DNA from: Macrostomum lignano
Lineage: Eukaryota
Assembly (NCBI GenBank): GCA_002269645.1
Contig: NIVC01002420.1
Coordinates: 62,001-126,000, forward strand
Length of the DNA stretch: 64,000 nt
Direction of reading: 5' to 3'
Positions 1-38,195 of this stretch are shown here, one piece after another. The translations under genes were made by a program, and so were the position numbers. Below the pieces are notes generated by a model that did not search any database, had not been told where the DNA came from, and saw nothing but the letters and a program-made list of their open reading frames with translations. How positions within the stretch are numbered: position 1 is the first letter of the stretch; the number at the start of each line of letters is the position of its first letter.

Positions 1-818
1 GGAAAGTACTTAAAGAAATACATGTTCAAGCAACAGATTACAATGCTTTAGAATAGCGAACAGTTGTTATGTTAAACAGTTTCTTTGGCTTGATCAGCTC
101 AATCAAAGTAGACAATCACGCGAAATTTGGTCTAGCCCGCACAGCTCCACATTGGAACCCCAAATCACGGAACTCATCAGAGTTCTCTTCTCTTCGCACG
201 TCGGCTCTCATTGAATTCCACGTCCTTCCAGAGGCTCCATGGCTTTCCGCATTGGTTGAACAAGTAGCGTTGCAGCATGCTGTAAATAATCCTTCAGCGT
301 AGAAGCGCCATAGCGATCACCACTTTTATTTCGGATCTCTAAGATAAACTACTTAAGGTATCGCGCTTGCTCAACTGGGATAGTCGGTTGCGGGTGCCAA
401 TGGCAAGTCACTCAAGACAGCTTCGACTTCAGCAAGACTAAGTGGTTCAAAGCCGACGCAGTCAACATCACTCATGTTGAAAATATTGTAACTCGAAAAT
501 GTCACAAAAATTAAAGAGATTTAGTAGAGACAACCACTCACTCTTAAATACCTACATGTAACGCAGTTATTTTCGTCAACTGCATCAAACCAACATTTCT
601 CTATGTTTAAAACTTACATTCTCTGACAGTAAAAACAGTTCTGGGCCACTGTACACCCTTTGTGATTGCACGCCCGTGTACATATCCGTGTGCGTATGCG
701 TACTAAGAGGCCAGGGGCCCGTACTACGAGCGGTCTACTGTATTGTACTGACTGTGGGATCTTCACTTTCAAAAGAAGGTTTCTAATTAGTACACTACGT
801 ACGCGTCAATACTTGCAG

Positions 819-2498
819 AACGTTATGCGAGACCTTGTCAAGCGCTACCTCATGGCCAGAACGAGAGCCGACGAGAAGCAGGGCGTCACGGAGGACGACT
901 TGAACGAGATCAAAGGCGACATTTCCTCGTTTCGCTTTGAACTGTTGGAGATTCTGCGCACCAATGGCATGAAGACGCCGGCTTATACTCAGCAGAGATC
1001 GAGTGAGTGGCGGGGTCTGGGGTGGCTGGGAGACTGCGGATTTCGCTTGAACTTGGAAGAAGAGAGCTGGGCTGGTTATGGGAGAATGTGGATTCTTAGA
1101 ATTCGAGAAAAGAGAGGACGGATTCTTAGAAAGAGATGAGGGATTCTTAGAAAGAGAGGACGGATTCTTAGAAAGAGAGGGTGGATTCTTAGAAAGAGAG
1201 AATGGATTCATAGAAAGAGAGGGCGGATTCTTAGAAAGAGAGGGCGGATTATTAGAAAGAGGGGGCGGATTCTTAGAAAGAGAAGGCGGATTCTTAGAAA
1301 GAGAGGGTGGATTCTTAAAAAGAGAGAATGGATTCATAGAAAGAGAGGGTGGATTCTTAGAAAGAGAGGGCGGATTCTTAGAAAGAGAGGGCGGATTCTT
1401 AGAAAGAGAGGACGGATTCTTAGAAAGAGAGGACAGATTCTTAGAAAGAGAAGGCGGATTCTTAGAAAGAGAGGGTGAATTCTTAAAAAGAGAGGGCGGA
1501 TTCTTAGAAAGAGAGGGTGGATTCTTAGAAAGAGAGGGTGGATTCTTAGAAAGAGAGGACAGATTTTTAGAAAGAGAAGAAAGAAGAATTCTAGGAAAGA
1601 GAGGACAAATTCTTAGAGTACCGGGTAGATTCCTGGTAGATATAGGGTAGATTCTTAGAATTCAAAGTAAGAGAAGGAGGATTCTTAGAATTCAAGAGAT
1701 TTCAAGGAAAGAGAGCGGGTTCTTATAGAATTCGCGGAAAGAGAGGGCAGAATCGGAGAGGGAAAGTGGTTTCTTAGAATCCAGGGAAGGAGGGGCGATT
1801 TCTTTTTAATTCTGGGTTGGAAACAGACGGATTCTACAAAGAAGTTGAAGATGATGAGAGTAAAATATACCCTTACCTTCACAATGTAACACATAAATGA
1901 GTGTAGGTGTCATGCTTCTGTGATGGAGAAACAGACAGAAGCAATTTGAATCATAAAATTCGATCGGAAAATAATATAATTAACAGCCGGTTACCGTTGC
2001 AATTAGTAGATAGCAGCTGTATCATAAGGCTGAGTGTTTACCCTCTCTATATTCCACACTCGTTTTATAACAAATCCACTGCAGTTCTCATGAATAAAAG
2101 AGGATTCAGTGATGGTGCGATAAGCGGATGCTGCTCAGTGGGAGTTCGGAGTAATTATAGATGTAGCCAGTAACTGCTCTGATCAGGATAGGAATTGGCA
2201 GCGTTGAAGACTCAGATGATTTACATGAACTGCGGGCGGTGTTATCACGATTATTGATTCCTCCTTTAGTATCAAATCCTCTCACTAAAAAGTGAATCAC
2301 GCAGCGTTCTTTTAAATTGTAGTTACTTTCTTAGTCAGTCAGTCAGTCAGTCAGTCAGTCAGTCAGTCAGTCAGTCAGTCAGTCAGTCAGTCAGTCAGTC
2401 AATCAGTCAGTCAGTCAGTCAATCAGTCAGTCAGTTAGTTAGTTAGTTAGTTAGTTAATTAGTTAGTTAATTAGTTAGTTAGTTAGTTAGTTAGTTAA

Positions 2499-2541
<43 letters not shown>

Positions 2542-7488: not shown

Positions 7489-10400
7489 TCAATGCTCGCT
7501 TAAATCGTCCAACAGTTGACCAACGTCTTCCCTGACGCCGTCCTTGATGTCCTTGGCGGCGTCGAGACCCCGACGAACTGCAGTCGTGGCCGACTCTCTG
7601 AGATCGTCGCCGCTGTCATCTTCTCCGCCGGATGAGGAGCCGAAAAATCGAATCAGAAGGCGGTTCACCTGATCTGGGGCGTCCTGCTGCACCCAGTGGC
7701 TGGCCTGCGGCACCAGCTGGAACTCCATCTGGCTGCAGTACTTGCCTGGATGTTATGGAGTGGCGATTGATCGAAGCTATTTAAAAAGATACCAACTTGG
7801 AAACCGCACCAGTTCGATTTAGAAACCTACTATTAAGAAACCCTTAAATTCAGGAACTCTACCATTTGGGAACCTTACAATTTAGGAACTCTACCATTCA
7901 GGAACTCTACCATTTAGGAACTCTACCATTCAGGAACCCTACCATTCAGAACTCTACCATTTAGGAACTCTACCATTCAGAACTCTACCATTAAGGAACT
8001 CTACCATTCAGGAACCTTACCATTCAGGAACCTTACCATTCAGGAACCTTACCATTCAGGAACCTTACCATTCAGGAACCTTACCATTCAGGAACTCTAC
8101 CATTTAGGAACTCTACCATTCAGGAACTCTACCATTCAGGAACCCTACCATTCAGGAACCTTACCATTCAGGAACCCTACCATTCAGGAACCCTACCATT
8201 CAGGAACCCTACCATTCAGGAACCATACAAGATTGGAAACTTGAAAAACCGTAACAGAGTTAAAGGACATACGGGCACTGTAATAAGCAACTGTCTGTAT
8301 TCGAAACTCACCAGACAATTTAGCCGCTTCCTGCGTGATGTACTTATCATTGGCGCCAAACACCAGCATGGTTGGCACTGTAAGCTGCTTCCTGCTGCCG
8401 CCTTCGGCGCCCCTTCTAGGATAGCGGAACGCGGCCCGGTAAAAGTTAATGGGCCCAGTTAAAGCGGTAGCCGACGAGAAGGTGTACTTGAAAGCGTCCA
8501 ATTCCTGCTGGTTAACAACGCCTTTCAAAGCGATGTCCATCGAGACGAGATCTTGACGAGTAATGAGCCATTCCGGAAAGCAAGGCAGCTGGAAGAAGAA
8601 CATGTACCAAGACTTGAGGAACTGGGTCAGATTCGAGCGAATGTAGGTCTGGAATGCCACGGGATGTGGGCAGTTGAGTACGGCCAGTTTGGTGACCATG
8701 CCCGGGTGAGCCATGGCGAACGACCAGACAACGACGCCGCCCCAGTCGTGACCAGCCAAGTAGCACTTGTCGTAGCCTGGTGTTGGTGAAATATTCTTTG
8801 TTCTTATCTAGTTTACGATTACTCAATCATAACTCTTTATTACTGCATTACTGCCCATTCCGCCGACTCCCCTGAGCAGGCATACAAGCGCGCGGATACG
8901 TACGCAGTCACACGCACAGGAGTGTACAGCGGCCCCGACTTTATTTATCGGTAGGCATGTACACTTCACTGTGCTTTGGGGGTTGGCCCTCAAGGATGTC
9001 AACTGCACGAGCAGAGCCAAGTCGAGATTCCAATTTAGCCCCAAAATTAATGCAACTACACTTGGAATCGAGCCTGGCCCGCTGGTTCATAAGTGCGCCA
9101 GGATAAACCACTAGTCCTCTCCCAAATCATCACAACTATGATTGTAAAACTCAACAGCCTACCAGTAAATCACAGCCTTTGTTCAAAGTGAAATATTAAG
9201 CTACAGGAAACGCAAATCTTACCCAAAGCGTTGATAGCCTGTCGGATATCTTCAACCAGTTTTTCAATTCGATAATTTTCAACGCCGCGCGGCTTATCGC
9301 TGTCGCCGTAGCCGCGCATGTCTATGGCCACAATCCTGTGGGCGAGGCGAGAATTAACAAGATCAAGATCTGGGCACTACCATTTCGCTAACCCCTGAGC
9401 AAACACACGCTCACACAGGGTGTGCGCTACTTAGTACTCTTAGTAAACTACTGTTAGTAGCTCGTAATGTGCTGCAGGGCAGTTTTATTTTGATTTAAAT
9501 TTTGCTAACCTGTAGTTCTTAGCCAGATCGCTGTCAAGCTGATGGCGCCAGCTGAACCAGAACTCTGGGAAGCCGTGCACCAGCAGCAGGAGGGGTTTCC
9601 GGGGATCGCCATTCTCAATGCAGTGCAGAGTGATGTCCTGTTAAGTAAAGTTAAACAAATACATGCAAGTGGAGCAGGTTAAGACATTAAAACATTACAA
9701 CAAAGCAGTTTCATTAGTCATTATGGGGACACCATTTTCATTTTGAGAGGGTTCCAGCAAACCAGTGTCAAGTACTCGTAGCGTCAAGGGCCAAGGCTAT
9801 ACTGTAAGGTGGCGCCAAGGCTATGATGTAGGATGGCGCCAAGGCTATACTGTAAGGTGGCGCCAAGGCTATGCTGTAAGGTGGCGCCAAGGCTATGTTG
9901 AAAGGTGGCGCCAGAGCTATACTGCAAGGTGGCGCCAAGGCTATGATGTAAGGTGGCGCCAAATACTTTCGCTAGCCAATTTTGCGGGTGAAGATTCAAA
10001 GTCGCCTTTTTTCAAAAAGCTCGATTTTCACGCGCAGAATGCATGACGGCACTTGGTGGGGGACTTGTGTTGTGTTGCGTGATAGAATTGCATCCACGAG
10101 TGTCCACTTTTGATTTCTATCATATTATCTTAACTAACTAATCGACTGAAACAGTCTAGTCAAAGTCCGATTGTAATAAAACTTCACTTAGTAAACAAAC
10201 TTTGAACGCGACGCTCAAGTGACGCCCATGTCTCAGTGTGCAGTGTTTAGTTAATCAAAAATACAAGTCCCAACTGATAAGGCAGGTCAGCTTTTAATCA
10301 GTCAACAGTGGCACTTGTTTTGCAAGTGAATCAAGTCAAACCCAGTCACCTCAGGCACGCAGCAAAGCAGTGCTAAACTACAAAGTTCAAACAATCCAAT

Positions 10401-16560: not shown

Positions 16561-17340
16561 ATAGCATATAGCATAGCAGCTGCACTTGCTCCAGGAAGGG
16601 ACACATCTTCGCTGCAACGGCTCATCACAGCTGTACGTCGGGAACGGATGTGGCGGTATAGACGGGCAGTCAGGAAAAGGGTTAGACTGTCCTAATCCAT
16701 CGGTCTGAGCCAATCGGCCGGGGCGGTTTTGCTGATTTGGCACAAAATCGTGCCATGCAGTCTTGTCATGGTTAAACCTCTCTTGGCTAAAACCTTAAAA
16801 CTTTCCAATACCAGTTCTGGGAGGTCTCCAATCTCTCGCGGAATCTTCTCAATGTACACGCTGAACTTTGCTTCCAATAGATACATGTATTACTGAGAGC
16901 TCGAATTAGTTCGGTAAATAATTGTTGCTCAACACTACTGGACAGAGAGTAGTTTTGCTAAATATAGTTGAGTGAACCAAAGAATCAAACTTCTCGTACA
17001 CAGCAACCGGAAACGTATTGTAATCGATTTTTTGTGCAGAGAAAAAGCTCACATCTGGGACATTAGGAAGCCAGACAGTCTAGACTAGAAACAGGATGCT
17101 CATTTCTAGAAAAGCTTGCTATCTAGGTTCGGATTCAAACGAAATAAAAAGTTAAACTGTTGTGAACCTAGATACATTTTTAGCTCTTTTTCCCTAATAG
17201 TTCTTAGTTCCAGAAGTGCGCTTCACTGAGCAGACGAACAAAATTGTTTTTAAACTTAGTTTTTAAACGTCTTCATATTTAACTACTGCAGTGATTTTCT
17301 TACTTCTTAGAGCAAATGTACAAAACATAGAGAATTATTC

Positions 17341-20300
17341 ATGGATTACTTAGAGGCGCTTCTGTCAAAAAAGTTAAAAAACTTATCTAATCTGATAAAG
17401 ACCGACGGTATTAGCCAGGTGAATCAGGCGCGGTACCAAGGCAACGGCCTTGTTCACGTGGCTGCCGCCAGCTCCGACCCGGAACTGACGCGGCTTGCCA
17501 TCCAGGCCGGGCTGGACCTGGAAGTGCGAAACGACGAGGACATGACGGCTGTTCACGTCGCGGTTGCTAGCGGCAATGCCGAAGTGCTGAAGCTGCTGCT
17601 GCAGGCCGCAGCGGACCCGAACGCTGTCTACGGCAGAACCGGCTGGGGTCCCCTGCACCTAGCAGTTCGTTCCGCCTCGACTGCCGCCTCCGTACAACTG
17701 GAGATGCTGCGCCTGCTGATGAAGAGCGGCGCCGATGCCAGTCTGACAGATGCGGACGGCAACACGCCGCTGCACCTGGCGGTGGAGGCCAACGCCGACA
17801 AGCGAGTCGTTGCTCAACTAGCTGACGCAATGGAGAATCGAGTCTCAATGAGAAACCTTCGCAGCCTGACGCCACTGGAATATGCAGCCATGAACGGCAA
17901 TCGAAAAGCGATTCAGCAGCTGGTGAAGCGAGGCGCAGTGCCGCAGATTCGACTGCTGAACCGGTTTGGCTATATTGCCTACGTTGAGGTGTTTCTGGAG
18001 ATCACCATCAACAAGTTGAGCACTGACTCTGTGGCCACTCTGCTCAGGCACCCGGATTTTCAGGCGCTGATTAACTACATTGTCTCCTACAAGATCAATG
18101 AACCCAATCGGCGCGATGCTCAGAGTGGTCAGTCGACAATTCTGAGCGATTTGGTTAATTCTCGGTACAGCGGTTTGGGCACCTTTAAGAGCCTGCTATT
18201 GAACAATATCAATACAAGATTCGCAAATTACCTATCTGACAATGCCAAGGCTAGAGCAGCCTGGGCTGACCTGGTTATAACCTACATCCTATTCAGAGAA
18301 TCCGTGTCCCTGATAAGGATGCTAATTGAGGACAAGCTTCTGTTCTTTCTAACTGACGCTGCAATCCAAGGCCAGCTGCACAATCTGTACAAAGGCAAGT
18401 TCAATCGCTGCCTACCAAGCTCTTTGTCTCAGAGCTTCGTAGCGGACGATGGAGCTAGTAAGCGGCAGATTGAGCAGATGTTGCGTCGTTGGCTGAAAAG
18501 CAAATCCGGTATCTGTTTGATGAAATTCGGATTCCCTAGCGAGGAAGCAGTCTCTATTGGTACTAGGCAGGTGTTTCGAGCGCCAGCCTTTAGCTTGATG
18601 ACCTGGGCGACTGCGTCCGGTCGCTATCACCTGTTGCCCTATCTTTTCATAGCCGAAGACACGGACAATATACCTCTCGGACTGTTCAGCATGGCGCTGC
18701 TCAATCGTCTTATGCAGGCGCGCAGCTCTGTCGGCACTCTATTCAGCCAGGATGCGGAGTACTATCGATTAGAGCTCGAAGTTCTCATACACTATCTCAT
18801 ATCCCGGATGTGGCACTTAGACAAGTCGCACGAGAAGTCCGACTCGGCGCTGTTCCAGCTGCAACAGCTGCCCGTGTATGGCGGGGCCAGCATGCTAGAC
18901 ATGACTATGCAAGTTCGATCATTGAAACTGCTCCAGTTTTCTAGCACTATCAGCGCTATGAGCCTACTGTGGTATCGCGGCCTGTCTTGGATGTCAAGCT
19001 CTCACCGGTTCCTGTTTATAGCTTCGTCATTAGGCCTCTGGTTTGTGCTGCTGATTCCGGTACTTGTGCCGACGTTGGAACGGCTGATTCCAGCGCGGTC
19101 GCCCGGCTTACAGTTCCTTAGAATCGGCCTCCTGCTGTGTCTGGCGTTCATCAATCTGCTGATCGGGCTGGGCCTAGCTGGGCGCTACACCCTTCGAAGA
19201 ATTGAGAAATTTCGACGAAAAGCATCAGCAGCCGAGAAGGAGCAACGACAAAAATTTGGCAGCCTCCTGCTCACTGGAGCGCCCGGCCAACGATGGCAGT
19301 TCGACGTCATGGCCGGGGACGCGCCGACGTCGAGCGCCGACTCCGTGCTGGAGTTTCTACGCACCCCAGCGGTGAAATACCTGGCCTTCTTGCTCACGTA
19401 CTTAGCCTATGTGCTATTAGGTTTATGGATTGGCATGCGAAACTTCCGGTACATCATTTCCGATGCAGAAATCGTCTATTGGATCTTCTTCTTCGGTTTT
19501 CTATTGGAGAACGGGCAGCAGTTTGTCCGCGCAAAATTATTTGGCAGTTGTTTCTATCGGCAGTCAATCTTCTGGGCCATAGTGTCGGTGCTTACCTACC
19601 TGTTGGGCTTGACAGCGTTTATCTGGCGAATGGTTTACCACACTGCTCACCAATTCGAAAACAGGACTGCGACTTCGTTTGAAGCGCGCGAAGTTGCCGA
19701 CTTAACTTTCCTGGGCGTTCGCTATCTATTCGTGCTGTCCCATTCGCTAATGTTTATGCAACTCTGGCGATTCTTGTCCTCGAGGCCGTGCATCGGGCTG
19801 TTAATCCGCATGATTGAAAAACTGATTAGATACTACTTGTGCCAGTTTGTGCTGCTCATGCTGCTGGTCATGATTCGAGGAGCGTTTATCTTTGGCAGTA
19901 TTTTGTATCCGCAGGTTAGTACTCTCGCAGCTAGTGAGACGATGCATCGAACAGAATTAATTAGTTTCCTTGTGCACTTAAATGGATTCTTCAGTATACG
20001 GTGATGCACTCATTTGCTAGCATGAATTTAAACTTGAAGTTTGAAAATTTAAATTGCGTATCAAGCACGATAAAACTCCTAATTCTTGTGTTCAAATAAA
20101 TGAAAGCAAAATTTGAAAAAAAAATCCTTTTCAGGGCTACGCAATGCACGCCAATAATGGCACGGTCACCCAGATGTCCCCTCCGATCTACTTTCTAAGA
20201 GTGTTCGTGCACTCGTACTACTCAATAATGGGTGAATTTCTGTCCGACTATCTGAGTGGATTCGAATGCCAAGGCGACTCCATCTGTCCGGCAACTTACC

Positions 20301-20749
20301 TGGGCAGCTTTTTGGTTACAGTATTTCACATGTCCGGGTACGCCTTCTACACCACTCTGCTGCTGCTTGGACTTCTCATCTCCTTGGTTACCATCATTGT
20401 TGACGAGCTCAACCGGAATCACATCGCTCACTGGCAGATTGCTCGGTACAACTTTGTGCAAGAGTTGAACTACTACTCTCTGCTTTATCCGCCATTCAAT
20501 GTGCTGCACATCTTAGTTGAATGGATCGGCATGGCGAACGACTGGAAAGCCGTTGCTCAACTGTACGACCTCGGCCAGGGTTTCTACAGCCAGTCCAGCC
20601 TGATCAACAACCTGCTCAGTCAGGCGTATGTTTTGGAGCGAGATCGAGATCGAATGCTAGCCGAGATCGAGCAACGGCGAGAGCACCGCAACAAAACCAA
20701 GATTGATACGGGAAACAGTGGACTGCATCGTTGGCGTTGCTGCTTCTAG
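17341..20749 (+). CDS. Ankyrin-repeat-containing TRPM-like cation channel (~1062 aa); exons 17341-19914 and 20135-20749
   Basis: Phase-0 intron 19915-20134 (CAG|gttagt ... tttcag|GGC) joins ORFs 17341 and 20144. About 5 ankyrin repeats (e.g. GNTPLHLAV) are followed by TRPM MHR3/4-like motifs (LIRMLIE...FLT..LHNLY; SLMTWATASGR), pre-S1 EFLRTPAVKY, six TM segments, a pore IMGE with two pore-loop cysteines, a TRP helix HWQIARYNFVQE, LLYPPFNVL and a short coiled coil. Confidence 0.88.
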
Positions 20750-20803: not shown

Positions 20804-21865
20804 CTCAGCAACAGTCAAAAGTTCGACAACTTTTCACTCACAATTCAACCCTCAAGTTACGCAACTAAGCGGCCGGCGAGGAAGGGAAAGTTAATTGAAT
20901 CAATAATAAACGTCAGTCGCACAAAAAAAGTAGAAAGTGCGGCGACTCTGCGTGGCATTCCCAGGTTGACCCGGCGCAGAAAGTCCTGGGGAAGCTGCTG
21001 CCAAGCGTTTTCAATGGCAGGACGCAGCTACGCAACATTCTATGGTGGACTTTATGGTGGATCTCAAATTCTGCGTTTTACGAAGTCCCCGACATCCTGG
21101 ATGGGATTGGTGTCTGGGGACCCGGAAGTGCAGAGTGCACAGCTGTATAGCCTTTTTCAGTTGACTAACACCATCGGCTCGGTGAGGCGGCGCGTTGGCA
21201 TCCTAGACAAACTCCAAGTGACAATAAGCTTAGTATTGCTTTTGACAGCCAAGTTGATAATTAAGCCAACCAAGTTAAGAATCCGCCTTGCGCAGTCAGC
21301 GAGTATTCCCAACCCTTCCGTCGATTTAGCATCGACACTCTTAGCCATAGACATAAAAAAGGCCAACCAAGTTGAAAAAAAGCCAACCAAGTTTAGAATT
21401 CAGTGCTTTTTCCACGCCTATTTCTGGCTGCCACGTCTCGCAGCGAGTTACCGTTAGCGACTGCAGCGATCAGGCGCTGGCGATCTGAGAGAGACGTTGC
21501 TGCAGACATTCTCTGCTATGGTCGAAAAACACTGCTTATAGAATCTATGGTATATAGGAATAGACGTGGAAAAGCACTGAATTCTAAACTTGGTTGGCTT
21601 TTTATCAACTTGGGTTGGCTTTTTATCAACTTATTGGTTGGCCTTTTTATGTCTATGGCCAAGAGTGTCGATGCTAAATCAACGGAAGGGTTGTGAACAC
21701 TCTCTGACTGTGCAAGGCGGATTCTCAACTTGGTTGGCTTAATTATCAACTTGGCTGCCAAAAGCAATACTAAGCTCCAAGTGCCGTAAGTTGCGTCACT
21801 CGCAAACCCAATAAGTGAGAAAAATTAATCTCGCTTGGAGGGTGGAACTTTTGACTGTTGCTGAG
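20804..21865 (-). mobile_element. Tc1/mariner remnant, copy 2 (same family as 3250-3846), carrying a nested MITE
   Basis: Same TIRs (ctcagcaacagtcaaaagtt ... aacttttgactgttgctgag) and colinear internal sequence. Decayed catalytic motif SPDTNPIQDVGDFVKRRI on the minus strand. Confidence 0.88.
21231..21772. mobile_element. Foldback/MITE-like element, 542 bp, with ~190-bp inverted arms and a 4-bp AGCT target duplication
   Basis: Left arm tagtattgcttttgacagccaagttgataattaagccaacc... mirrors the right arm ...ggttggcttaattatcaacttggctgccaaaagcaatacta. AGCT flanks both sides (21227-30, 21773-76); copy 1 of the Tc1 has a single AGCT at this position. Confidence 0.85.
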
Positions 21866-23310: not shown

Positions 23311-26300
23311 TCAGACAGAGCCCTCAGGATAGATAATCCGAGGTGCCAGGCAGCTCCTGTCAGTTGGCTGTGGCGACGCGGGCATGGCCAAACTGCTGCC
23401 GCCTCCGCTGCTGCCAATCCCGCCGAGCTCGATGGATTCTGGCAGCGCGGACATCGGGCTGGGGAGCCCAATGCCTTGGCTGAGAAATGATGATTGCTGC
23501 TGCTGTTGATGCTGTTGCAGCTGTTGCTGGTGCAGATGATGATGCTGATGGTGCAGCAGCGGATGCAAGGCTTGCAGGTTGGACTGTCGAGACATGGAAG
23601 CGGCTGCAGCCGCCGCGGCGGAGGGGCAGAGAGCGCACGAGAGGTCCTCGTCTGAGCAGCCGCGTCCGCTGTCCGATCGATTGCCGTCGGCGCCGGGTCC
23701 GGCGGTGGCCGCGGCGGCACCGGATGAGGCCGAGGATCCGGTGGCGGTGCCCGAGGAGGCTGGGATCGCCTGGCGGTGCCTGTACAGACTGGCCATGTCT
23801 TGGACGATGAACGGCCTGCCGCCGCACTGGAAGGTTCAACGGATGATGACGATGCTTGGAATGAATTGAATTTGGAATTGTGGCGTCACTCATTTACAAC
23901 AAACGTGGTCTCTTTTCAAAGCTGAATATCAAATTACTTTGCACAAACTGATAAACATGCTACTGATAGCGACTGAAAGACCATGGGTTGTACTTTTTTA
24001 GTCATATAAAATCCCGTGTCGATTAACCTAGCTAGCAATAAAAAGTTAGGAGTAGTCTTGGCAGTTTGGAAATGAAGACAATATTTCATTTTTTGGATTC
24101 CTGTTGTGCAGAATTCTAAACTTCAAATCGTCCTCGTGCATCGTATTTGCGATGAATACTCACCCCCATAGTACTGCACAGGTGAGAATGATGCGAGCCA
24201 ACATCGCAACTGGCCTCTGTCAGCGGCGTCTCCTGCTCGTAATATCGTTGGTCCTCATCATCCGCGCCTTTTTTTCGGCCTCCAATGCTTGCGACGCCAC
24301 CGACACCCCTGCCGCCGTCCCGGCCACCTCTGCCGGCCCGGTAGGCGAGATCAAACAGGCCGCCAGTGCACGACCGATTTATGCAAGCGACGGCTAAGAT
24401 CAAAGCGACCGCCAATAGGGCCGATACTGAGGCCAGCGTGATTATAATGACGACGTTGCGTCGAGTGTGTCGCTCTGTCAGACTTGCCGCAGTCTCGTCC
24501 GACGCGATTGGCAAAGAGTTGTCAACGTCGATGTAGATCACCTGTTGAGAAATTAATTATAGACAAGAATTATAGACAAGCTATCTTCGCACATTTTGTT
24601 AGCAGACCATGCACAATCGTCAGAAGTTCGGTATTAAGCAACTTTATTTGCGTTGATGAAGTTATAGTGACCTATTTAGAGTTAGAGTCAGGGGGCTGTG
24701 TGCACATTGGCGCACTTAAATCGACATTGTCGCACGACTCCACTGGGCACACACTCAAACAGGAGTGCACAGCGGCCCTGACATTAGTTATCGTTAGGCA
24801 TGTGCACTTCACTGTGCCATGGGGGTTGGCCCTCAAGGATGTTCGCTGCACAAGAAGACCCAAGCCGAGCTTCAAATTTAGCGCCAAATCAATGTGACTG
24901 CACTTGGAATCGAGCCTGGGTCGCTGGCACACCAGAGCCTGCGCTAGACCGCTGGGCTACGGCCCCTCTCCCTGGGTGACTGCTCCCCAAGGGCGATGGG
25001 AAAAAATGTCTATGGTCAAATCCTTCCATATAGATACGGGTACAGGAAATCCAATAAAATATGTAAATTTCTAGTATAGCTTTGTTTCGGTTCTTTACAT
25101 TAAGCACGTAATCCAGTGACAAGCTTATGAATCCAAGGTGTAAAATAGGTGCTCTCTCTTATCATTGGCTGCTGCCAGCAACAACGGCCGCACTTCCCTA
25201 ACCCCTAGGAAGCAGCACCTAAGATATAGAAAATCTGAAACTCTCAGGACACTATTTTTTCTAAACCTTACTCACGATCTCGGGACACTCTGGTGCAATG
25301 CCTTCGGCGACATCGTACCACAACCAGCGCTGAGGGAATTCTGCCCATTCCGCTGACTCCTGAGCACATGCAACCGCGCCAGTACTGTTTGCAGGCACGA
25401 TTCTCAGGCATAGTGTACAGGCATGTACACTCTCTGTGCCTTGGGCGACTGGTCGTCACGGGTGCGAATCGCACGACAAACCCCACGGCCAATTCAATGC
25501 AAAAAATCGAACCAGCGGTCGAGAGTCAGACGTTTTAACCTCCATGTTGTCTGTCGTCTCTCCTATTCCCGCTGATTTTAATGCTCAATAGCTCACCCTG
25601 ATATCGCTCCAGGTGTGTCGTCCACCGCCAACCACTTTGGCTATGACGGTATGCCTTCTCAGGTCCACAATGCCCAGTTCCCCGGCTACCCGAATGTCTC
25701 CGCTGCTCGAATCGATGCTGAACCTGGGCGGAAACGTCTCCGGCGCGATCAACTTGTACACCATGCGAGCATTCGCACCGACATCCGGGTCAAAGGCGCG
25801 CACTCGAATTACTAGCGCATTCTTCGGATGCGTGTAGATGCTGATGCGCACCGAGGTGCCATTTTCGGCTGGCAAAGAAATCCTTGGCGGCTCGTCGTCC
25901 TCGTCAATGATCGTCACGACGACTTCCGCGTCAGTGTGTCGGGCCAGGCCGCCGGGTCCTTGGTCGGTGGCGCGGACGCGAAGCCGATGCTTGGGGCACT
26001 CCTCGCGATCGAAGCTCACTAGCGTGTAGAGAGATCCGTCCTGGTCCAAGCGAAAGCTGGACGCTGTCGGACTCGACAGTAAAGTGAAGGTCACTTGAGC
26101 GTTTTCACCTGTGTTTTTGGCAGGTTGAGAATAAGGAGTCTGATATATTAGTCTGTACTCTTTGACATCTGATACGCTTGCTTTATTGCATGCGCTAATT
26201 CGAGCAATGTACTCCTACAGTACAGGACAGTACTTGAAGTCTACTTAACATTCTTACGTGCAGAAATCAAATTTTAGAGTTTCTTGAGACATAAATCTAT

Positions 26301-29300
26301 AAACTCACATGAATATCATTTGATTGTTTCTATTTGTCCCATTTGAGACAAACTAATCGAAGGATGAAGAAAAAATAAAGATTTGTTGATGGTTTATTGT
26401 CATAACAGCTTTTTTGCCTGACACGCAAAAATTTCAGAAAAATTTCTGATTTGTCCACCAAGAGACAGGGACACCCACCAAGAGACAGGGACACCCACCA
26501 AGAGACAGGGACACCCACCAAGAGACAGGGACACCCACCAAGAGACAGGGACACCCACCAAGAGACAGGGACGCCCACCAAGAGACAGGAGAACCCACTA
26601 CTAAGAGACAGAAGGGCCCACCAAGAGATAGGGACACCCACCAAAAAGACAGGGACACCCACCAAGAGACAAGATACTAAATGTTGGCGTTCCTTAGGTT
26701 TGCAACCCCTCCAATTTAAATTCCTTAGGTAGGCGGTCTTCAGTCTTGAAGTTAAACCCTGATAAAACACAAAGGTTCATGATTGTCTTTGCGATTTTTT
26801 CTATTTTTGCTCCCTAAAAAGCCTTTAAAAATCAGTATGCTCATGCAAGCTACTAAATTACTCGTAAAAGTAGCGTGAAGGAGCTTTGCTATCCGAACAT
26901 GAATGAACAACAATGAACAGCATTAGAATATTTTGTGCCCAACTCATCGTCCCCAGCTCTCAGCCGTCTGTTCCCACCATAGAAAGTTTAGAATAGCGCA
27001 GCTGAAACTCACCCAAATCAGCGTCTCTCGCCGTCAATTGGCCCAGCTGTATCAACGCTTCGCTATTCTCTACAATAGAAAAGTGTCGAGCTCCGTAAAA
27101 CTCCGGCGCATGATCGTTAGTGTCCAGTATCGACACCTTCACTGTGGCGGTCGTCGACATTGCCGGATTTCCGGCGTCAGCCGCCTCAACCAGCAGCTCG
27201 TATTTGTCGACGGACTCTCTATCCAGCAGGCTGGTGGTGGTCAAGCGGCCTGACGTCGGGTCCACCGCGAATGGCACCTCCGAGGAGCTGCTAATTAGGC
27301 GATAGGTAATCCGGGCATTCTCTCCTTTGTCTGCGTCCGTCGCCTTTACATTGACGACTTCAACGCCTGGTCGACGATTTTCTTCCACTTGAGCAGCGAT
27401 GCAACCGTAGTGATCCGCGTCTTTGAATACGGGAGCATTGTCGTTGATATCTGTCACCTGAACGAGCGCCGTGTAGGTGCTTGTCAGGCTCGGATCTCCG
27501 GCGTCCCAGCAGGTCAGAGTACCGGTGACGCTCGGCTCGACCTCTCGGTCTATGGCTCTTTGAATCGCTATTTTGTAAACACCTGAAAATTCTACACTAG
27601 TAAATTGCAGAGCTGCTTGCTCTGAGTTGGCCGCACCGCGACAGGTCCACTGACCTCCGGGGCCAGTGTCTGGGTCCGACACGGAGACGAATCTCGGCGA
27701 AGCATCGCCGGGCAGTTCGTTCTCAGTTACGTAAAACGGCTTCGTGTCCGACTCTCGGTACCTGGGCGGGTTGTCGTTGCGGTCCAGCACTCTCAGGTGC
27801 ACGGGCGCAGTGTCGTCAAAGTTACCATCGAATACGCGAACGGAGAACCGAAGTTCGTTTATTTTCTCATAGTCAAGAGGCTCCTCAGTCGTCAGCAGGC
27901 CGCCGTCGTCAGTTACGCGCAGGTGGCGACGTACATCCTCGGATGCTTCGGTCGGATCGAGACTGTAGCTGAGATTGTAGTGCAGGTCAAGATCGTCGGC
28001 TGTGAGCTGTGGATATTCATAAGCAAAGTTTTCTATTGGATTTTCTCGTGTGTTTAGAAAAGAAAAAAGGCATTGTTGCGGCACACTCACTCTCGGCCTA
28101 ATCTATTCGCAGAAACGGCAGCATTTAAGACTGCAATAATTTCATTCATTAATTTCGTCCGGTGCGCTATAGATCATACTGGCTAGCGGGGTAGCTGATA
28201 GCCATAAGCCTCTGCTAATTTAACCACCTCCCAATGATTGATCGATGATAACTGAGGATTTAGCTACCTGGCTCTCATTGTTTGCGATATATCCCATTCC
28301 TATCTCTCCAAATTGCCAATTATCGCTCCGCCAGATCTTCCGTTCTGTTCCCCAATGCAAGTCTTCATCTCTTTTCGTCTCTCCTCATCTCAAAAACTGC
28401 TGAGTGTAGAATCGATTTTTTAGTGGCGGTGAGACAGAGAGCTATTGGACTAGCTCTTCGCAATTATGTTTTCCGTGCCTGATTGGCTGACTCGCGAAAT
28501 TATATTATTATATTAGACTAGAGGAAGGACGTGGCAGAAGAGGCTAGTTGATAAAAAAACTTAACTACTATATAAGGCGACTTATGGTGGCCGGTCTTAC
28601 TGATGATGTTTTGACTTCCACATATGAGACCAGCTTGGGCTAGCCGACACGCGAGCAAGCCTCAGAGCCCAGAGCCCAAATGGCACGACGAAGGATGGAA
28701 AGGGCCGGACTGAGAGAGATTTTAGAAGTTTGCGAGACGTGAATTCCGACTGGTATAACCCACCCCGGCTCCACTGCCGCCGGCTAGCTGAGGGCAAGCA
28801 CTGGACTGAGTTGGACCAACTGACTGGCTGATGATGTAGAACGCGTCGGGGGAGACTGGGATTGCTCCATCTTGCCTGTCTAACGGTAGAAAAATATAAC
28901 TTTAACCGGCCTGCCTTCCACCGGGGCCTACCAAACTGTAGTTCAACTGACCCCCTTACTCCCCAACCCACCTACGCCTCGCTCCCAGCAGTGGAGCGCC
29001 ATTGTGGAAACTGTCTCGGTAGCTTCTGTCAAAACCGCCCCGGCCCTCACCGTCCTGCCCACCTCACCTGCATTTCCAACTGGCTGCAGAGAGGGGTGCA
29101 GCGGGGAGTAAAGGACTTCTAGGCGGCTACTGGTGGGAAACAACGCTGAAAAAATAATTATTTTGCCAAGCCGGGGATGAGAAGCGCGCCCAACCAAGGC
29201 CTCTCCGGCTGCAAGTTGTGCGTGTTTGGCGACTGCAGCTTTTTTGGAGGAGGCCAGCCTTGTTTATAGCTACCTACCTTTAGCGGTGTGGCATAACGCC

Positions 29301-32066
29301 GCCCTGAGCTGCTGCTCTATTTGGTATTCAGGACGGGAGAAAATGGAGAGATGAAAGAGGTAAGGCAGAAAAGGTACGCGACTATTCAGCAAGGAATCAT
29401 CTCTCACATGCGGGGGTGACACTATGGAATGGAGATGTAGGAAGAATCGGTGCTGAGGAATCTGTGCTAGTCAAACTACTGGCATGGTAAACCGCGCCAT
29501 ACACCGCCGGGGTTCGCTTCTCGCTCGTTTTCATTCACGTCAAAACAGCCTCAAGGGCGAACGGATGATTGATGAGCTGTCTGCATCAGCTCTCATTCTA
29601 GTTGGGACTGAATTGTGTGTCGGAATGAAGTTAAGCCTTTCTTTGGCTCTCAGACGTTTCTGTTAACCATTCAGTGCGTCAATATTGAATTTCCCGTAAA
29701 TTACTTAGCCAAATGTGCCTTCCTCAGTTAAATCTACGGGGGCATGTCAAATCTTTGGCAGCTGTTTGCAGAAACTTACGAAGTACTTTACCTATGACCT
29801 AAAAATCTACTATTACACCTGTACCTCCCTATGTGTAGGAGCGAACAAAGACTTAAATTACTAAACAGAGGAGGCAGAGTAGTCCCACGGTAACCACCGC
29901 TTTGATATCCAAAGCCCCTCCCCTAAGAATGTAAATGAATATTTAATAGTCGCTACTGGCTCCGCTGACTCCTCTGGCGCGCGCAGATATTGTATTCAGG
30001 CACGCACGCGTACACACGATCACACAGGGTGTACACTGGCCCTGGTTTTCTAATCGGTAGGCATGCACACTCTCTGATGATGTCTAAGCGCTGCTGGCTT
30101 TTGTGGGTGTGAATTAAATAGTTGTGGTCGCACAAGGAATCGAACTGGGGCTCGTGGCATGATGGAGTCAGAGCAGCCCTCTGCCCTCTCCCTAAAGCCC
30201 CTATAAAATATTCAACTGTATGAGAATCATGATCTTTTATCTTTCTAGATCAGGAAGTCTTATAGCGTTGTGACAACATATCTTTCTTTTGGTCTTCCTA
30301 CATACGGAAAATGCAGCTATCTCAAGTTTAAATAGTTTTGACACAATAACTATTGCTTAGAAGCTCATCATTCTTACCTAGCCTCACGCAGCTTCACTCA
30401 GGGCTGTCCAAAACTGACCCAGTGAGTTTTAAACCGGAATCCCCAGCATCAGTTTGGTAAATCCTTGATGCATCACTGCCAAATGCATGCGCAGCAATAT
30501 TTCTGGCTAGGATTATTGAAGGGATTTAGCGATTCTGGAGTTCTCGTATTTTTATTATTCGCAGAATAATCTCTTGGGCTTGAGCACGGGGGTATTGATT
30601 TAAATGAGAAAAAACTCAAACACTTTATTACAACTCGCTTTCGTACGCCTGTACTCATCCTTGGGATGGCAATTTCATTCTGCTTTAAACAGCAGCTTTT
30701 AGTCGAGAGCTCAGAACAATCAAAACATTACCTGCTCTGCTTCTGGCGTGATGGATAAAGTGAAGTGGACTCGTTTCTCCTCTTTGGGAATAGATGACAG
30801 TCTTGTGCAGGCTGTAGACTAAGCACCTGGTTATTGCTAGCGCACTTTCCATTGACTCAAGGGATTTTTTTCTGGGAAACAATTTGGCTTTTCTTTTGTT
30901 TGGGAAAATCCTTTGCTATCGGAGGCTTCCTACCTGCGCGGGAAGAATTTCTTAGATCTGAGCTGGTAGCTCAAAGCATAAAAGAATTGCATGTAGAACA
31001 AATAAAAATGTTTTATTAAGGAATCTTTTAATTATTAAATAGAAATGTTTTTTGACAGGAAGGAAGGTTGGAGATCAAAAGAAGATTAAGAATCGATCAT
31101 CAAAGCCGCTTTGAATACAAATTTGATTTGCAGTCTTACCTGCAAGATCAGTGTGCCATTGGGTTGATTCTCCGGTACGGAGACATTGTAGAATTTATTC
31201 CTGAACCTTGGACTGTTATCGTTGACGTCTTTGATGGTAAGCCGGACGCGCGCCCGACCTTCCCGGCCGGGTCCGTCCCGAGCCAGCAGGTCGAACTGGT
31301 AGTATTGACGAGTTTCAGCGTCCAAGCCTTTCTGAATGAACAGATAAGGTTTGTCGATGTTGTCGGTTTTCAGAGTGAAGGTCGCCGCTGTCTCCTTGCT
31401 CAAACTGGCCGGATCGAAGCTGTAGCTGATGCTGCGAAACTCCTCAGAGAAGTCCCCGTCCGTGGCTACTGGCAGAGAAATTTTTCTAGACGAGCACGGC
31501 ATCGGTACTACAAAACAGATCGACTCGTCGCACCCGATATCGAAGTACTCCCCGTCAATGCTGGGAAACTCTGGCGCGTGGTCGTTCCAATCGGTGACGT
31601 TTAAAGTGAACTGTAGCCGAGCAATTATTGGTTGGCGAATTTTCCGACGGTCGGCGACGTGTGGACGAACTAGAACAGCGAATTTGTGTCGGCCGACGCC
31701 GTGCAGGCAGTTGAACGCCCTGACGCACAGCTGTTCAAGATCGATCTTTGTGTGCAACCGAAGCCGACCTGTGCTTGCATCGACGTCCACATACGGATCC
31801 TGCTCGGCCATGGAATACTCGGCTCTTGCCGTCGTGGATGGCTCGACGCTTTCGGAGGAATCAACGGCTAGAAGTCTGGACAGGCGGCCCGTCAGTCCAG
31901 TGAGATCCTGGGCAACGCCTAAGTCTAGCGGAGCGGTCTCTTCTTGAACTGTCAGACTGGCTGATAGAACTGTCAGGCTGGCGTGAACGTTGGTAGGGAT
32001 TTTACAGGTGATAAAAGCCGCTAGGAGAAGCAGCGACGAAAGTTTCAAGTAGCTCAGGTGCGGCAT
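23311..32066 (-). CDS. Non-clustered delta-type protocadherin (~1108 aa, 7 cadherin repeats); exons 31140-32066, 27013-28006, 25597-26108, 24164-24541, 23311-23826
   Basis: GT-AG introns with consistent phases (0, 1, 0, 0); total 3327 nt. Signal peptide MPHLSYLKLSSLLLLAAF; DxNDNxP-type linkers (DWNDHAP, DVNDNSP, DRNDNPP, DINDNAP, DTNDHAP, DEDDEPP); TM VVIIITLASVSALLAVALILAVAC; cytoplasmic SDSGRGCSDED resembling the delta-protocadherin CM1 motif. Confidence 0.9.
24690..24960 (-). mobile_element. tRNA-derived SINE-like repeat, best-preserved head
   Basis: Minus strand starts gtagcccagcggtctagcgcaggctctgg...ccaggctcgattcc (A-box- and B-box-like), followed by the family core catgcctaacgat...cagggccgctgtgcac. 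Confidence 0.72.
25343..25540 (-). mobile_element. SINE-like repeat, variant body
   Basis: B-box-like ggttcgatt, core gtgtacatgcct and 3' tail ggagtcagcggaatgggcag shared with the 8843 copy. Confidence 0.6.
26456..26670. repeat. 20-bp minisatellite (agagacagggacacccacca)n
   Basis: Directly visible tandem units. Confidence 0.93.
29950..30175 (-). mobile_element. SINE-like repeat
   Basis: B-box-like agttcgattcc, core catgcctaccgattagaaaaccagggccagtgtacaccctgtgtg, and tail ggagtcagcggag. Confidence 0.62.
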
Positions 32067-32141
32067 TTGGCTTCTTTCTTCTTTGAGCTGCAATTTGACG
32101 TTGTCGAGGGGATGGGGTTGCGTCAGAATGATGTAACAATT

Positions 32142-32335
32142 AGACCTGCAGGATGTGTCTGATGAGCCTAAATGATGATACACTTAGACCTGCATGATGT
32201 GTCTGATGCGCCTAAATGATGATACACTTAGACCTGCATGATGTGTCTGATGCGCCTAAATGATGATACACTTAGACCTGCAGGATGTGTCTGATGTGCC
32301 TAAATGATGTTACATTTAGACCTGCATGATGTGTG
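32142..32335. repeat. 44-bp tandem repeat (ttagacctgcatgatgtgtctgatgcgcctaaatgatgatacac), ~4.5 copies
   Basis: Directly visible, just upstream of the protocadherin acceptor at 32088-89. Confidence 0.9.
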
Positions 32336-34956: not shown

Positions 34957-35825
<869 letters not shown>

Positions 35826-36935: not shown

Positions 36936-37132
36936 AGCAGAAATAGTTAAGGCCTCGACGTGACAGGCGTGCTGGCAGCATCAAATCCATAATTGATAAT
37001 CGACATGCAGAGGTCTCACATCGTCCTTCCCAATGCACAGCAGCATCAGCAGCAGCAGCTGTAACAATCGCCTTGCCCGCCAATCTCCGCACTCAGTGAC
37101 TGACCAACCCAAAATTATTTTATTTTCTAATA

Positions 37133-37413: not shown

Positions 37414-38195
<782 letters not shown>

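What the first reader, a model, noticed from the sequence alone, without database searches (positions are those of the whole stretch)
17341..20749. Chimeric TRP channel: ankyrin repeats in place of the TRPM MHR1/2 (SLOG) head
Seen in sequence: about 5 ankyrin repeats (aa ~35-200) run, within one large exon, into a body that reads as TRPM. That body has MHR3-like LIRMLIE..FLT..LHNLY, MHR4-like SLMTWATASGR, pre-S1 EFLRTPAVKY, a pore IMGE with a C...C loop, a TRP helix HWQIARY and LYPPF. Established knowledge: canonical animal TRPM channels have an MHR1/2 (SLOG) N-terminus without ankyrins, while ankyrins characterise TRPA, TRPC, TRPV and TRPN. Inference: this is a divergent, possibly undescribed ankyrin-TRPM architecture, produced by domain swap or retained from an ancestral state. 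It lacks a Nudix or kinase tail, ends in RCCF (possible lipidation) and has only one coding intron, which may indicate retro-origin. Flatworm TRPM paralogues are of pharmacological interest because the praziquantel target is one.
Basis: partly seen in the sequence, partly recalled or inferred. Interest (0 to 1): 0.8.

Follow-up and report, generated by a model that had tools for sequence, protein, structure and literature searches.

The report
Divergent ankyrin-headed flatworm-type TRPM channel
This is a real two-exon gene for a TRPM-type ion channel with five ankyrin repeats where the usual SLOG head would be, but that design is already known from the flatworm meclonazepam target TRPM_MCLZ, and this copy is an unusually divergent relative of it.

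Summary
Window 17341-20749 (+) encodes a 1062-aa protein from two exons. One uninterrupted 858-codon exon runs from five ankyrin repeats through an MHR4 domain to helix S5. The second exon adds the pore, S6, TRP helix and a short tail.

The body is TRPM. A family profile matches solved TRPM structures at E=4e-83, and canonical SLOG-bearing TRPMs at E=1.4e-72, from MHR4 to beyond the TRP helix. No SLOG, Nudix or kinase domain is present. MHR3 similarity is only at motif level and not significant.

The architecture is not undescribed. Every N-terminally informative top relative among 1.84 billion representatives is a flatworm protein with ankyrin repeats and no SLOG domain, and most also match the Pfam TRPM2-like domain and Ion_trans. 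These come from Macrostomum, Schistocephalus and Opisthorchis. Published work describes schistosome TRPM_MCLZ with exactly this head, with 63 orthologues predicted.

The window gene is not a TRPM_MCLZ orthologue. It keeps 0 of 6 drug-contact residues, has a different intron position and falls outside that clade. It is at most 28% identical to anything, and it departs at 22 of 49 near-invariant columns, including the VSLD Ca2+ site, the S4 arginine and the S6 asparagine.

Verdict: a new, very divergent member of a known kind. Interest is modest.

The parts
17341..19914 (+). Coding exon 1 (aa 1-858): start codon, ankyrin repeats, linker, MHR4, pre-S1 elbow and S1-S5
   Evidence: Uninterrupted ORF. 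An in-frame TAG lies at 17308-17310, read. tblastn with family proteins finds no further exons elsewhere in the window.
17440..17955 (+). Five ankyrin repeats (aa 34-205)
   Evidence: Pfam Ank_2 E=4.9e-23, Ank_4 E=4.2e-22, Ank E=3.6e-19. PDB ankyrin-1 E=3.7e-50. Five helix pairs in the AF2 model, with 10-residue block means of pLDDT mostly 79-89.
17956..18540 (+). Helical linker (aa 206-400) with the MHR3-like motifs LIRMLIE and LHNLY
   Evidence: Predicted helical hairpins. Alignable to the same region of the Macrostomum relatives (28.6 bits to P0072). Similarity to canonical MHR3 is not significant (hhalign E about 0.5-0.95).
18541..18984 (+). MHR4-type domain (aa 401-548), including SLMTWATASGR...W544
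   Evidence: hhalign of the family profile against canonical TRPMs starts here (probability 100, E=1.4e-72). The PDB profile hits start at MHR4. This segment alone hits Macrostomum proteins at E down to 1.6e-14 at library scale. In the relatives the Pfam TRPM2-like domain PF25508 maps onto WIN aa 356-531.
18997..19194 (+). Two hydrophobic helices (aa 553-618) at the position of the TRPM pre-S1 elbow
   Evidence: Hydropathy peaks of 2.5. Zebrafish TRPM2 aligns here through its pre-S1 segment.
19330..19914 (+). Pre-S1 helix, S1-S4 voltage-sensor-like domain, S4-S5 linker and S5 (aa 664-858)
   Evidence: Alignment to nvTRPM2 and TRPM3 and helices in the AF2 model. Residues that depart from the consensus: N724, A746, S749, Q807.
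19915..20134 (+). Single coding intron (220 nt), GTTAGT...TTTTCAG
   Evidence: Read-through would end the frame at 20004, before the pore. The junction YPQ|GY matches the family consensus YPNG.
20135..20749 (+). Coding exon 2 (aa 859-1062 plus stop): pore helix, MGE filter, C902...C909 loop, S6, TRP helix, LYPPF and a C-terminal helix
20225..20287 (+). Selectivity-filter region IMGEF (aa 889-893) and the pore-loop cysteine pair (C903, C909)
   Evidence: G and E align with the VGEY / YGE filter of the relatives and of nvTRPM2 and TRPM3. Both cysteines sit in columns conserved at 85% or more.
20420..20497 (+). TRP helix HIAHWQIARYNFVQEL (aa 954-969) and the LYPPF motif
   Evidence: W958, R962, E968, P977 and P978 sit in conserved columns. 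Aligned to the TRPM TRP helices.
20905..20910 (+). AATAAA, a candidate polyadenylation signal 156 nt after the stop codon
   Evidence: Consensus match only.

Best explanation
The gene encodes a subunit of a tetrameric six-transmembrane TRP cation channel. It belongs to the ankyrin-headed branch of flatworm TRPM channels, whose characterised member is TRPM_MCLZ, the schistosome meclonazepam target.

Shown: five ankyrin repeats replace the MHR1/2 (SLOG) nucleotide-binding head and continue into a helical linker and a true MHR4 domain. These are followed by a pre-S1 elbow, S1-S4, S5, a pore helix with a Gly-Glu filter and a two-cysteine loop, S6, a TRP helix and a short helical tail with no Nudix or kinase domain.

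Inferred: it conducts cations. By analogy with other TRPMs it would be gated through the S1-S4/TRP-helix cavity and the cytosolic solenoid. Its pocket differs from TRPM_MCLZ at all six drug-contact positions. The canonical TRPM Ca2+ site in S2/S3 is degenerate (E to N, N to A, D to S). I therefore predict it is insensitive to meclonazepam and is not Ca2+-activated through that site.

It is a long-branch paralogue, not the TRPM_MCLZ orthologue, from a lineage with no close relative in the databases.
For: - Gene model and single-exon fusion.
- Ankyrin repeats.
- TRPM identity of the body: all 25 single-sequence PDB hits are TRPM. The family profile scores E=4e-83 to 7.5e-52 against TRPM2/3/1/4/5/7/8, contiguous from MHR4 to the TRP helix. 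hhalign against canonical SLOG-TRPMs gives probability 100, E=1.4e-72. In Foldseek with the MSA-based AF2 model (pLDDT 72, pTM 0.65), ranks 2-50 are all TRPM.
- Shared architecture in relatives found with an ankyrin-free query: P0001-7, 9, 10, 11, 15 and 23 all carry ankyrin repeats and no SLOG domain. Most also match the TRPM2-like domain and Ion_trans. They come from Macrostomum lignano, Schistocephalus solidus and Opisthorchis.
- NJ tree of S1 to TRP helix: canonical TRPMs split off from the ankyrin-type sequences plus the window protein in 93% of bootstraps.
- Literature: TRPM_MCLZ lacks SLOG, has ankyrin-like repeats, and is a functional cation channel.
- Retained core residues: G and E of the filter, C903/C909, W958, R962, E968, P977-978.
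Against: - The protein deviates at 22 of 49 columns conserved at 85% or more, the most of 32 sequences compared; the next highest is 16. The deviations include the S4 Arg (Q807), the S6 Asn (G937), the S4-S5 linker Pro (L820) and the VSLD Ca2+-site residues. It may therefore not conduct, or may be decaying.
- Pfam does not detect Ion_trans or the TRPM2-like domain in the single sequence.
- Grouping with the Macrostomum clade has only 47% bootstrap support on a very long branch.
- There is no orthologue, no transcript evidence and no test of selection.
- The organism is unidentified.
Confidence: 0.72

Rival explanations
1. It is a decaying or non-conducting copy. That could be a young pseudogene whose frame is still open, or a regulatory subunit that no longer forms a pore on its own.
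For: It deviates at 22 of 49 near-invariant columns, the highest of 32 sequences. It has lost the S4 Arg, the S6 Asn, the S4-S5 Pro and the VSLD Ca2+ ligands. It has no detectable orthologue among 15 billion proteins. Pfam Ion_trans is below threshold.
Against: The 3.2-kb reading frame is intact, with canonical splice sites and a junction that restores the family motif. The amphipathic and hydrophobic helix pattern, filter Gly-Glu, pore cysteines, and TRP-helix W/R/E are retained. The AF2 model folds as a TRPM-like channel. About 75% divergence with a preserved fold implies long-term purifying selection rather than recent release from constraint.
Confidence: 0.2
2. It is the species' true TRPM_MCLZ orthologue, simply fast-evolving.
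For: It has the same head architecture and no enzyme tail. TRPM_MCLZ-like proteins of Schistocephalus and Opisthorchis are among its hits (E=6e-17 and 8e-16).
Against: None of the six meclonazepam-contact residues is kept, although H831 and R943 are reported as completely conserved in 63 orthologues (F683, Y687, F720, N724, Q807, L969). The intron lies between S5 and the pore helix, whereas TRPM_MCLZ encodes the whole channel domain in its last exon. The neodermatan clade, with 77% bootstrap, excludes the window protein, and Macrostomum paralogues score better.
Confidence: 0.06
3. It arose by an independent, lineage-specific domain swap of ankyrin repeats onto a canonical TRPM, convergent with TRPM_MCLZ.
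For: The branch is very long and support for grouping with the Macrostomum clade is weak (47%). Macrostomum P0026 shows that ankyrin repeats can also sit in front of a SLOG-bearing TRPM.
Against: The best hits from an ankyrin-free query are the ankyrin-type proteins, not canonical TRPMs. The linker between the ankyrin repeats and MHR4 is alignable to the same linker in Macrostomum proteins. The split of canonical TRPMs from ankyrin-type sequences plus the window protein has 93% support.
Confidence: 0.05

Closest known systems
TRPM_MCLZ (Schistosoma mansoni Smp_333650 and its orthologues in trematodes, cestodes and monogeneans), the meclonazepam-activated TRPM channel
   Same: N-terminal ankyrin(-like) repeats instead of MHR1/2-SLOG, a TRPM-type S1-S6 and TRP helix, a short C-terminus with no Nudix or kinase domain, and very few exons. 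Proteins matching the TRPM_MCLZ description, from Schistocephalus, Opisthorchis, Fasciolopsis and Protopolystoma, are detectable homologues.
   Different: About 20-23% identity in the channel domain. None of the 6 drug-contact residues is kept. The intron interrupts the channel domain rather than preceding it. The window protein falls outside the neodermatan clade.
Macrostomum lignano ankyrin-TRPM paralogues (for example PAA51132.1, PAA66045.1, PAA57148.1; annotated as hypothetical or ANK_REP_REGION proteins)
   Same: These are the best hits (E=7e-35 to 7e-20). They share the collinear order ankyrin repeats, linker, MHR4, pre-S1 elbow, channel, and have no SLOG domain.
   Different: Only 24-28% identical in the channel domain. 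The Macrostomum proteins keep the S1 histidines, EE in S2, WNxxD in S3, the S4 Arg and the S6 Asn, all of which the window protein has lost.
Canonical TRPM channels (nvTRPM2 6co7, TRPM3, TRPM7, TRPM4/5/8)
   Same: MHR4, pre-S1 elbow, S1-S6, a Gly-Glu/Gln filter position, a pore-loop cysteine pair and the TRP helix WxxxRY.
   Different: No MHR1/2-SLOG domain, no significant MHR3 match, no Nudix or kinase domain and no Pfam TRPM_tetra hit. The VSLD Ca2+ site is degenerate.
TRPN/NOMPC and the other ankyrin-bearing TRPs (TRPA, TRPC, TRPV)
   Same: An N-terminal ankyrin solenoid in front of a six-TM TRP channel. NOMPC is the top Foldseek hit for the whole chain.
   Different: The channel sequence gives no hit to any of them at E<=10. 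The region between the ankyrin repeats and the membrane is an MHR4 domain, which those families lack.

Membership tests
TRPM (melastatin) family | S1-S6/TRP-helix sequence closest to TRPM rather than to other TRP families | tested here: met
   With the single sequence, all 25 PDB hits at E<=10 are TRPM. With the profile, the top 60 are all TRPM, E=4e-83 to 7.5e-52. hhalign E=1.4e-72.
TRPM (melastatin) family | MHR4 domain directly before the pre-S1 region | tested here: met
   The alignments start at WIN aa ~401. The segment alone reaches E=1.6e-14 against relatives. PF25508 in the relatives maps onto it.
TRPM (melastatin) family | MHR3 domain | tested here: inconclusive
   A collinear motif register exists (ILFRE...LY against the canonical FLEN...LY). 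hhalign of aa 206-400 against canonical TRPMs gives E=0.5-0.95.
TRPM (melastatin) family | MHR1/2 (SLOG, LSDAT_euk) N-terminal domain | tested here: not met
   No LSDAT hit at E<=1; ankyrin repeats occupy the N-terminus. Canonical hits P0019, P0020 and P0026 do carry LSDAT_euk.
TRPM (melastatin) family | C-terminal coiled-coil tetramerisation helix | tested here: inconclusive
   No Pfam TRPM_tetra hit. AF2 predicts a long helix at 1011-1057 at moderate confidence.
Flatworm ankyrin-headed TRPM clade (includes TRPM_MCLZ) | Ankyrin repeats, then MHR4, then a TRPM channel, with no SLOG and no enzyme tail | tested here: met
   for the window protein; for the relatives; for the published description.
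Flatworm ankyrin-headed TRPM clade (includes TRPM_MCLZ) | Channel domain groups with ankyrin-type sequences rather than with SLOG-bearing TRPMs | tested here: met
   The NJ split has 93% bootstrap support. The tree is unrooted, uses a distance method and has a long branch, so confirmation by ML is needed.
TRPM_MCLZ orthologue group | Conservation of the six meclonazepam-contact residues (H827, H831, Y864, E868, R943, Y1117) | tested here: not met
   The equivalents are F683, Y687, F720, N724, Q807 and L969. The paper reports H831 and R943 as invariant in 63 orthologues.
TRPM_MCLZ orthologue group | Three-exon gene with the entire channel domain in the last exon | tested here: not met
   The window gene has two coding exons, with the intron between S5 and the pore helix.
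TRPM_MCLZ orthologue group | Placement inside the neodermatan TRPM_MCLZ clade | tested here: not met
   The clade of Schistocephalus, Opisthorchis, Fasciolopsis and Protopolystoma sequences (77% support) excludes the window protein.
TRPM_MCLZ orthologue group | Activation by (S)-meclonazepam | not testable with these tools
   Requires heterologous expression and Ca2+ imaging or electrophysiology.
TRPS (soromelastatin) | SLOG N-terminus and Nudix C-terminus; a sister clade to TRPM | tested here: not met
   No SLOG or Nudix domain. Placement of the channel domain against TRPS sequences was not tested, because no TRPS reference was on hand.
TRPN / TRPA / TRPC / TRPV | Channel domain of that family behind the ankyrin repeats | tested here: not met
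   No hit to any of them at E<=10 with the ankyrin-free body. NOMPC ranks first only in the whole-chain fold comparison.

The most novel reading that the evidence does not exclude
The window gene may represent a separate, so far unrecognised subfamily of ankyrin-headed TRPM channels, paralogous to TRPM_MCLZ and to the Macrostomum expansion. Its ligand and Ca2+ cavity is rebuilt (F683, Y687, N724, A746, S749, Q807 with the Arg shifted to 810) and its S6 gate is altered (G937). This would imply a gating stimulus different from any characterised TRPM. It would also show that the ankyrin-for-SLOG head predates the parasitic flatworms and diversified widely.
Probability: 0.3. Interest if true: 0.5.

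Novelty: new member of a known kind. Interest (0 to 1): 0.3.

Why it matters
Ankyrin-headed flatworm TRPMs are validated anthelmintic targets, with TRPM_MCLZ as the example. Three points follow from this gene.

- It shows how far the S1-S4/TRP-helix drug pocket and the S6 gate can drift while the fold is kept.
- Together with the many Macrostomum paralogues found here, it indicates that the ankyrin-for-SLOG head is older than parasitism and is not confined to the single TRPM_MCLZ orthologue group.
- For annotation, the practical lesson is that this gene should be named an ankyrin-repeat TRPM-like channel. It should not be called TRPM7-like or a generic ankyrin-repeat protein.

It does not overturn the current picture of TRP evolution.

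Tried and rejected
- The search for homologous proteins with the ankyrin-free body and with the family alignment returned nothing, not even the alignment's own members. The 8000-candidate word filter was probably saturated by hydrophobic words.
- The single-sequence AF2 model was unusable, with pLDDT 40.
- I tried to identify the organism through the neighbouring alpha/beta-hydrolase exon. It gave only 35-39% identity over most of the query, plus two partial matches of 62-63% from unnamed contigs.
- A metagenome scan for close relatives found none.
- hhalign of the linker (aa 206-400) against canonical MHR3 was not significant in local, greedy or global modes.
- Rejected: an annotation or assembly fusion of two genes, because one ORF spans both parts and the relatives share the order.
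- Rejected: CaaX prenylation of RCCF, because the cysteine is in the wrong position.
- Rejected: membership of TRPN, TRPA or TRPC, because there is no sequence hit to them.
- Rejected: tandem paralogues in the window, because tblastn finds only the gene itself.
Full report
**1. Gene model**

On the + strand there are two long ORFs, 17341..20004 (887 aa) and 20144..20749 (201 aa). A donor CAG|GTTAGT follows position 19914 and an acceptor TTTTCAG| precedes 20135. The intron is 220 nt. Splicing joins the ORFs in frame into a 3189-nt CDS of 1062 aa.

The junction reads ILYPQ|GYAM, which reproduces the family consensus LLYPNG(Y/F). That is good independent support for the splice. Without splicing the frame ends at 20004, before the pore.

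An in-frame TAG lies ten codons upstream of the ATG (sequence). That TAG is also the end of a possible acceptor (cttcttag). An upstream coding exon therefore cannot be excluded. However, tblastn with thirteen family proteins finds nothing outside 17.3-20.8 kb, and there is no paralogous copy in the window. An AATAAA lies 156 nt after the stop codon.

The key point is that the ankyrin repeats and the channel up to S5 lie in one uninterrupted 858-codon exon. The chimeric architecture therefore does not depend on any annotation decision.

**2. What the protein contains**

- **Ankyrin repeats.** Pfam detects only ankyrin families, at aa 35-202 (Ank_2 E=4.9e-23). At E<=1 it finds no Ion_trans, LSDAT/SLOG, TRPM2-like, Nudix or kinase domain. 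Five repeats are visible, at aa 34-205.
- **Transmembrane layout.** Hydropathy shows two strongly hydrophobic helices at 553-618, then S1, S2, S3, S5 and S6.
- **Similarity of the body.** The ankyrin-free body (aa 206-1062), searched against all PDB sequences, gives 25 hits at E<=10. Every one is a TRPM. The best is Nematostella TRPM2 at E=1.8e-6, from S1 to beyond the TRP helix. Zebrafish TRPM2 also aligns the pre-S1 elbow.

**3. Relatives**

A full HMMER search of the ankyrin-free body against 1.84 billion representative proteins found only 44 hits at E<=1e-3. None exceeds 33% identity, and the full-length hits reach at most 28%. No orthologue exists in that collection.

The query contained no ankyrin repeat. 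Even so, the best hits that have an N-terminus (P0001-7, 9, 10, 11, 15, 23) all carry ankyrin repeats and no SLOG domain. Most also match Pfam PF25508 (TRPM2-like domain, the MHR3/4 region) and Ion_trans, although P0009, P0010 and P0015 lack the PF25508 match and P0003 and P0023 lack the Ion_trans match. Lower hits (P0019, P0020, P0026) are canonical TRPMs with LSDAT_euk.

The ankyrin-type proteins come from these species:
- the cestode Schistocephalus solidus;
- the trematodes Opisthorchis and Fasciolopsis;
- the monogenean Protopolystoma.

Nearly all 44 hits are flatworm proteins. This makes a flatworm origin of the window plausible. I could not identify the species.

**4. How far the TRPM homology extends**

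A profile of the body of the window protein plus eight relatives (A1) hits solved TRPM2/3/1/4/5/7/8 structures at E=4e-83 to 7.5e-52. The alignments are single and contiguous, from the start of MHR4 to past the TRP helix. The 60 best hits are all TRPM.

Profile-profile comparison with six canonical flatworm TRPMs (A2) gives probability 100 and E=1.4e-72, starting at window residue ~401. MHR4 alone (aa 401-560) hits Macrostomum proteins at E down to 1.6e-14, even when scaled to the whole library. MHR4 is therefore established.

The segment 206-400 is different. It is alignable to the same linker in the ankyrin-type relatives (28.6 bits to P0072). Its comparison with canonical MHR3 is not significant (E=0.5-0.95). 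I rate MHR3 as inconclusive.

**5. Structure**

The single-sequence AF2 model was useless (pLDDT 40). With a 32-sequence alignment the model reaches pLDDT 72.3 and pTM 0.65. It shows:
- five ankyrin helix pairs, with 10-residue block means of pLDDT mostly 79-89;
- further helical hairpins through the linker;
- MHR4;
- a TRP-channel transmembrane domain;
- a long C-terminal helix at 1011-1057.

In Foldseek against the PDB, NOMPC ranks first, since it too has ankyrin repeats plus a TRP channel. Ranks 2-50 are all TRPM, with TM-scores of 0.37-0.48. The modest TM-scores reflect the orientation of domains in a monomer model.

**6. Comparison with the literature**

Himmel et al. 2020 state that TRPM and TRPS are the ankyrin-free TRP families (PMC7306681). 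The 2026 survey of TRPM evolution did not sample flatworms (PMC13143021).

The flatworm pharmacology literature already describes this architecture. Sm.TRPM_MCLZ (Smp_333650) "lacks the NH2-terminal MHR1/2 or SLOG domain" and instead has ankyrin-like modules, with a short C-terminus lacking any enzyme domain (PMC11731825). It is a three-exon gene encoding a functional channel activated by (S)-meclonazepam (PMC10788528). Sixty-three orthologues have been predicted in trematodes, cestodes and monogeneans (PMC12861061).

Two observations link my hits to that family:
- The Opisthorchis protein P0010 has two tandem channel domains. This matches the duplicated exon 3a/3b reported for Opisthorchis and Clonorchis.
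- The Schistocephalus protein P0009 carries the reported cestode signature (F826, H827, H831, Y864, E868, E893, R943, F946, Y1117, K1120, S1121), read from the alignment.

**7. The window gene is not the TRPM_MCLZ orthologue**

- **Pocket residues.** At the six drug-contact positions it has F683, Y687, F720, N724, Q807 and L969. That is 0 of 6, although H831 and R943 are reported as invariant.
- **Intron position.** Its intron lies between S5 and the pore helix, whereas TRPM_MCLZ encodes the entire channel domain in one exon.
- **Tree.** I built an NJ tree of 300 trimmed S1-TRP columns with 300 bootstraps.
  - Canonical TRPMs, including the nvTRPM2 and TRPM3 references, split from the ankyrin-type sequences plus the window protein with 93% support.
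  - The neodermatan TRPM_MCLZ-like clade has 77% support and excludes the window protein.
  - The window protein attaches to the Macrostomum clade with only 47% support, on by far the longest branch.
  - The tree is unrooted and distance-based. No TRPC, TRPN or TRPS outgroups were available.

**8. Degree of divergence**

There are 49 alignment columns conserved at 85% or more among 31 ankyrin-type and canonical TRPMs. The window protein differs at 22 of them. The next most deviant sequences differ at 16, and most differ at 0-8.

The changes include:
- E724N, N746A and D749S. By established knowledge of TRPM2/4/5/8 structures these are the S2/S3 Ca2+ ligands; Q727 and the TRP-helix E968 are kept.
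- R807Q in S4, with an Arg appearing one turn later at 810.
- P820L in the S4-S5 linker.
- D832Y and P835Q in S5.
- N937G, A941S, F943V, S944T and T946I in S6.

Retained residues include the filter Gly-Glu (MGE), the pore-loop cysteines C903 and C909, W958, R962, E968, P977-978, and the MHR4 residues G427, R428 and W544.

**9. Interpretation**

The most likely reading (confidence about 0.72) is a cation-channel subunit of the ankyrin-headed flatworm TRPM branch. It would be a long-branch paralogue with a remodelled S1-S4 cavity and S6.

- **Shown:** the architecture and the homology.
- **Inferred:** conduction, tetramer formation, insensitivity to meclonazepam, and loss of Ca2+ activation through the canonical site.

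The main rival (about 0.2) is a decaying or non-conducting copy. Against it stand the intact 3.2-kb frame, the conserved splice-junction motif and the preserved helix pattern despite about 75% divergence.

- The low intron number is a family trait and is not evidence of a retro-origin of this particular gene.
- RCCF is not a CaaX box. Palmitoylation is possible but untestable here.

**10. Verdict**

The gene is a new and unusually divergent member of a known kind, and the interest is modest.

Noticed in passing
window ~700-1000 (+), within ORF 666..1139: A C-terminal exon of a TRPC-type channel. The peptide YLQNVMRDLVKRYLMARTRADEKQGVTEDDLNEIKGDISSFRFELLEILRTNGM matches Drosophila TRPgamma (E=7e-15) and TRPC4/5. 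A second TRP-channel gene therefore ends about 16 kb upstream of the ankyrin-TRPM gene. The coding sequence runs into a 21-bp tandem repeat at 1109-1577.
   Followed up: partly
window 39906-55975: A satellite array of about 16 kb, with higher-order periods of 238, 376 and 475 bp built from 68-71-bp subrepeats (TGGTCCACATAACCTACAGACACAACTCGAACAG...). Neighbouring higher-order units are 97-98% identical in places.
   Followed up: no
window 25585-32183 (-): Several long ORFs read as cadherin repeats, with the motifs LDRNDNPP, VTDINDNAP, ILDTNDHAP and IKDVNDNSP. They are probably exons of a large protocadherin- or FAT-like gene. Not analysed further.
   Followed up: no
window 8193-8759 (-): An exon of an alpha/beta-hydrolase of the epoxide hydrolase 4 type (GHDWGG...). 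The matches covering most of the query are only 35-39% identical, and two partial matches of 62-63% identity come from unnamed contigs. The source organism therefore has no named close relative in that protein collection.
   Followed up: partly
window 2320-2692, 4996-6755, 34959-35825, 36301-36937, 37414-38193, 58336-62978, 63449-63898: Unusually dense micro- and minisatellites: (TAGT)n, a 30-bp unit repeated 58 times, (TGTC)n of about 0.8 kb twice, and 23-25-bp units repeated 36-70 times. They produce long spurious ORFs and the strong GC-skew blocks in the composition profile.
   Followed up: no
P0026 (Macrostomum lignano PAA85706.1, 1781 aa): A canonical TRPM (LSDAT_euk, TRPM2-like domain and Ion_trans) that also has an Ank_2 hit (E=1e-7) in front of the SLOG domain. 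It could be an intermediate or parallel state for how ankyrin heads were acquired. A gene-model fusion was not excluded.
   Followed up: no
P0001-P0007, P0011, P0012, P0022, P0023 (Macrostomum lignano): A free-living flatworm carries at least ten distinct clusters of ankyrin-headed TRPM_MCLZ-like channels that keep the S1 histidines, the S4 Arg and the TRP-helix Arg. I found no paper in the held library that links TRPM_MCLZ to Macrostomum.
   Followed up: partly
window 61051-61629 (-): An ORF with a PDZ-like stretch (RRVTLLKDASASSFGFSVRLATG...VVASVVTGSAA) next to a poly-Q run. Not tested.
   Followed up: no
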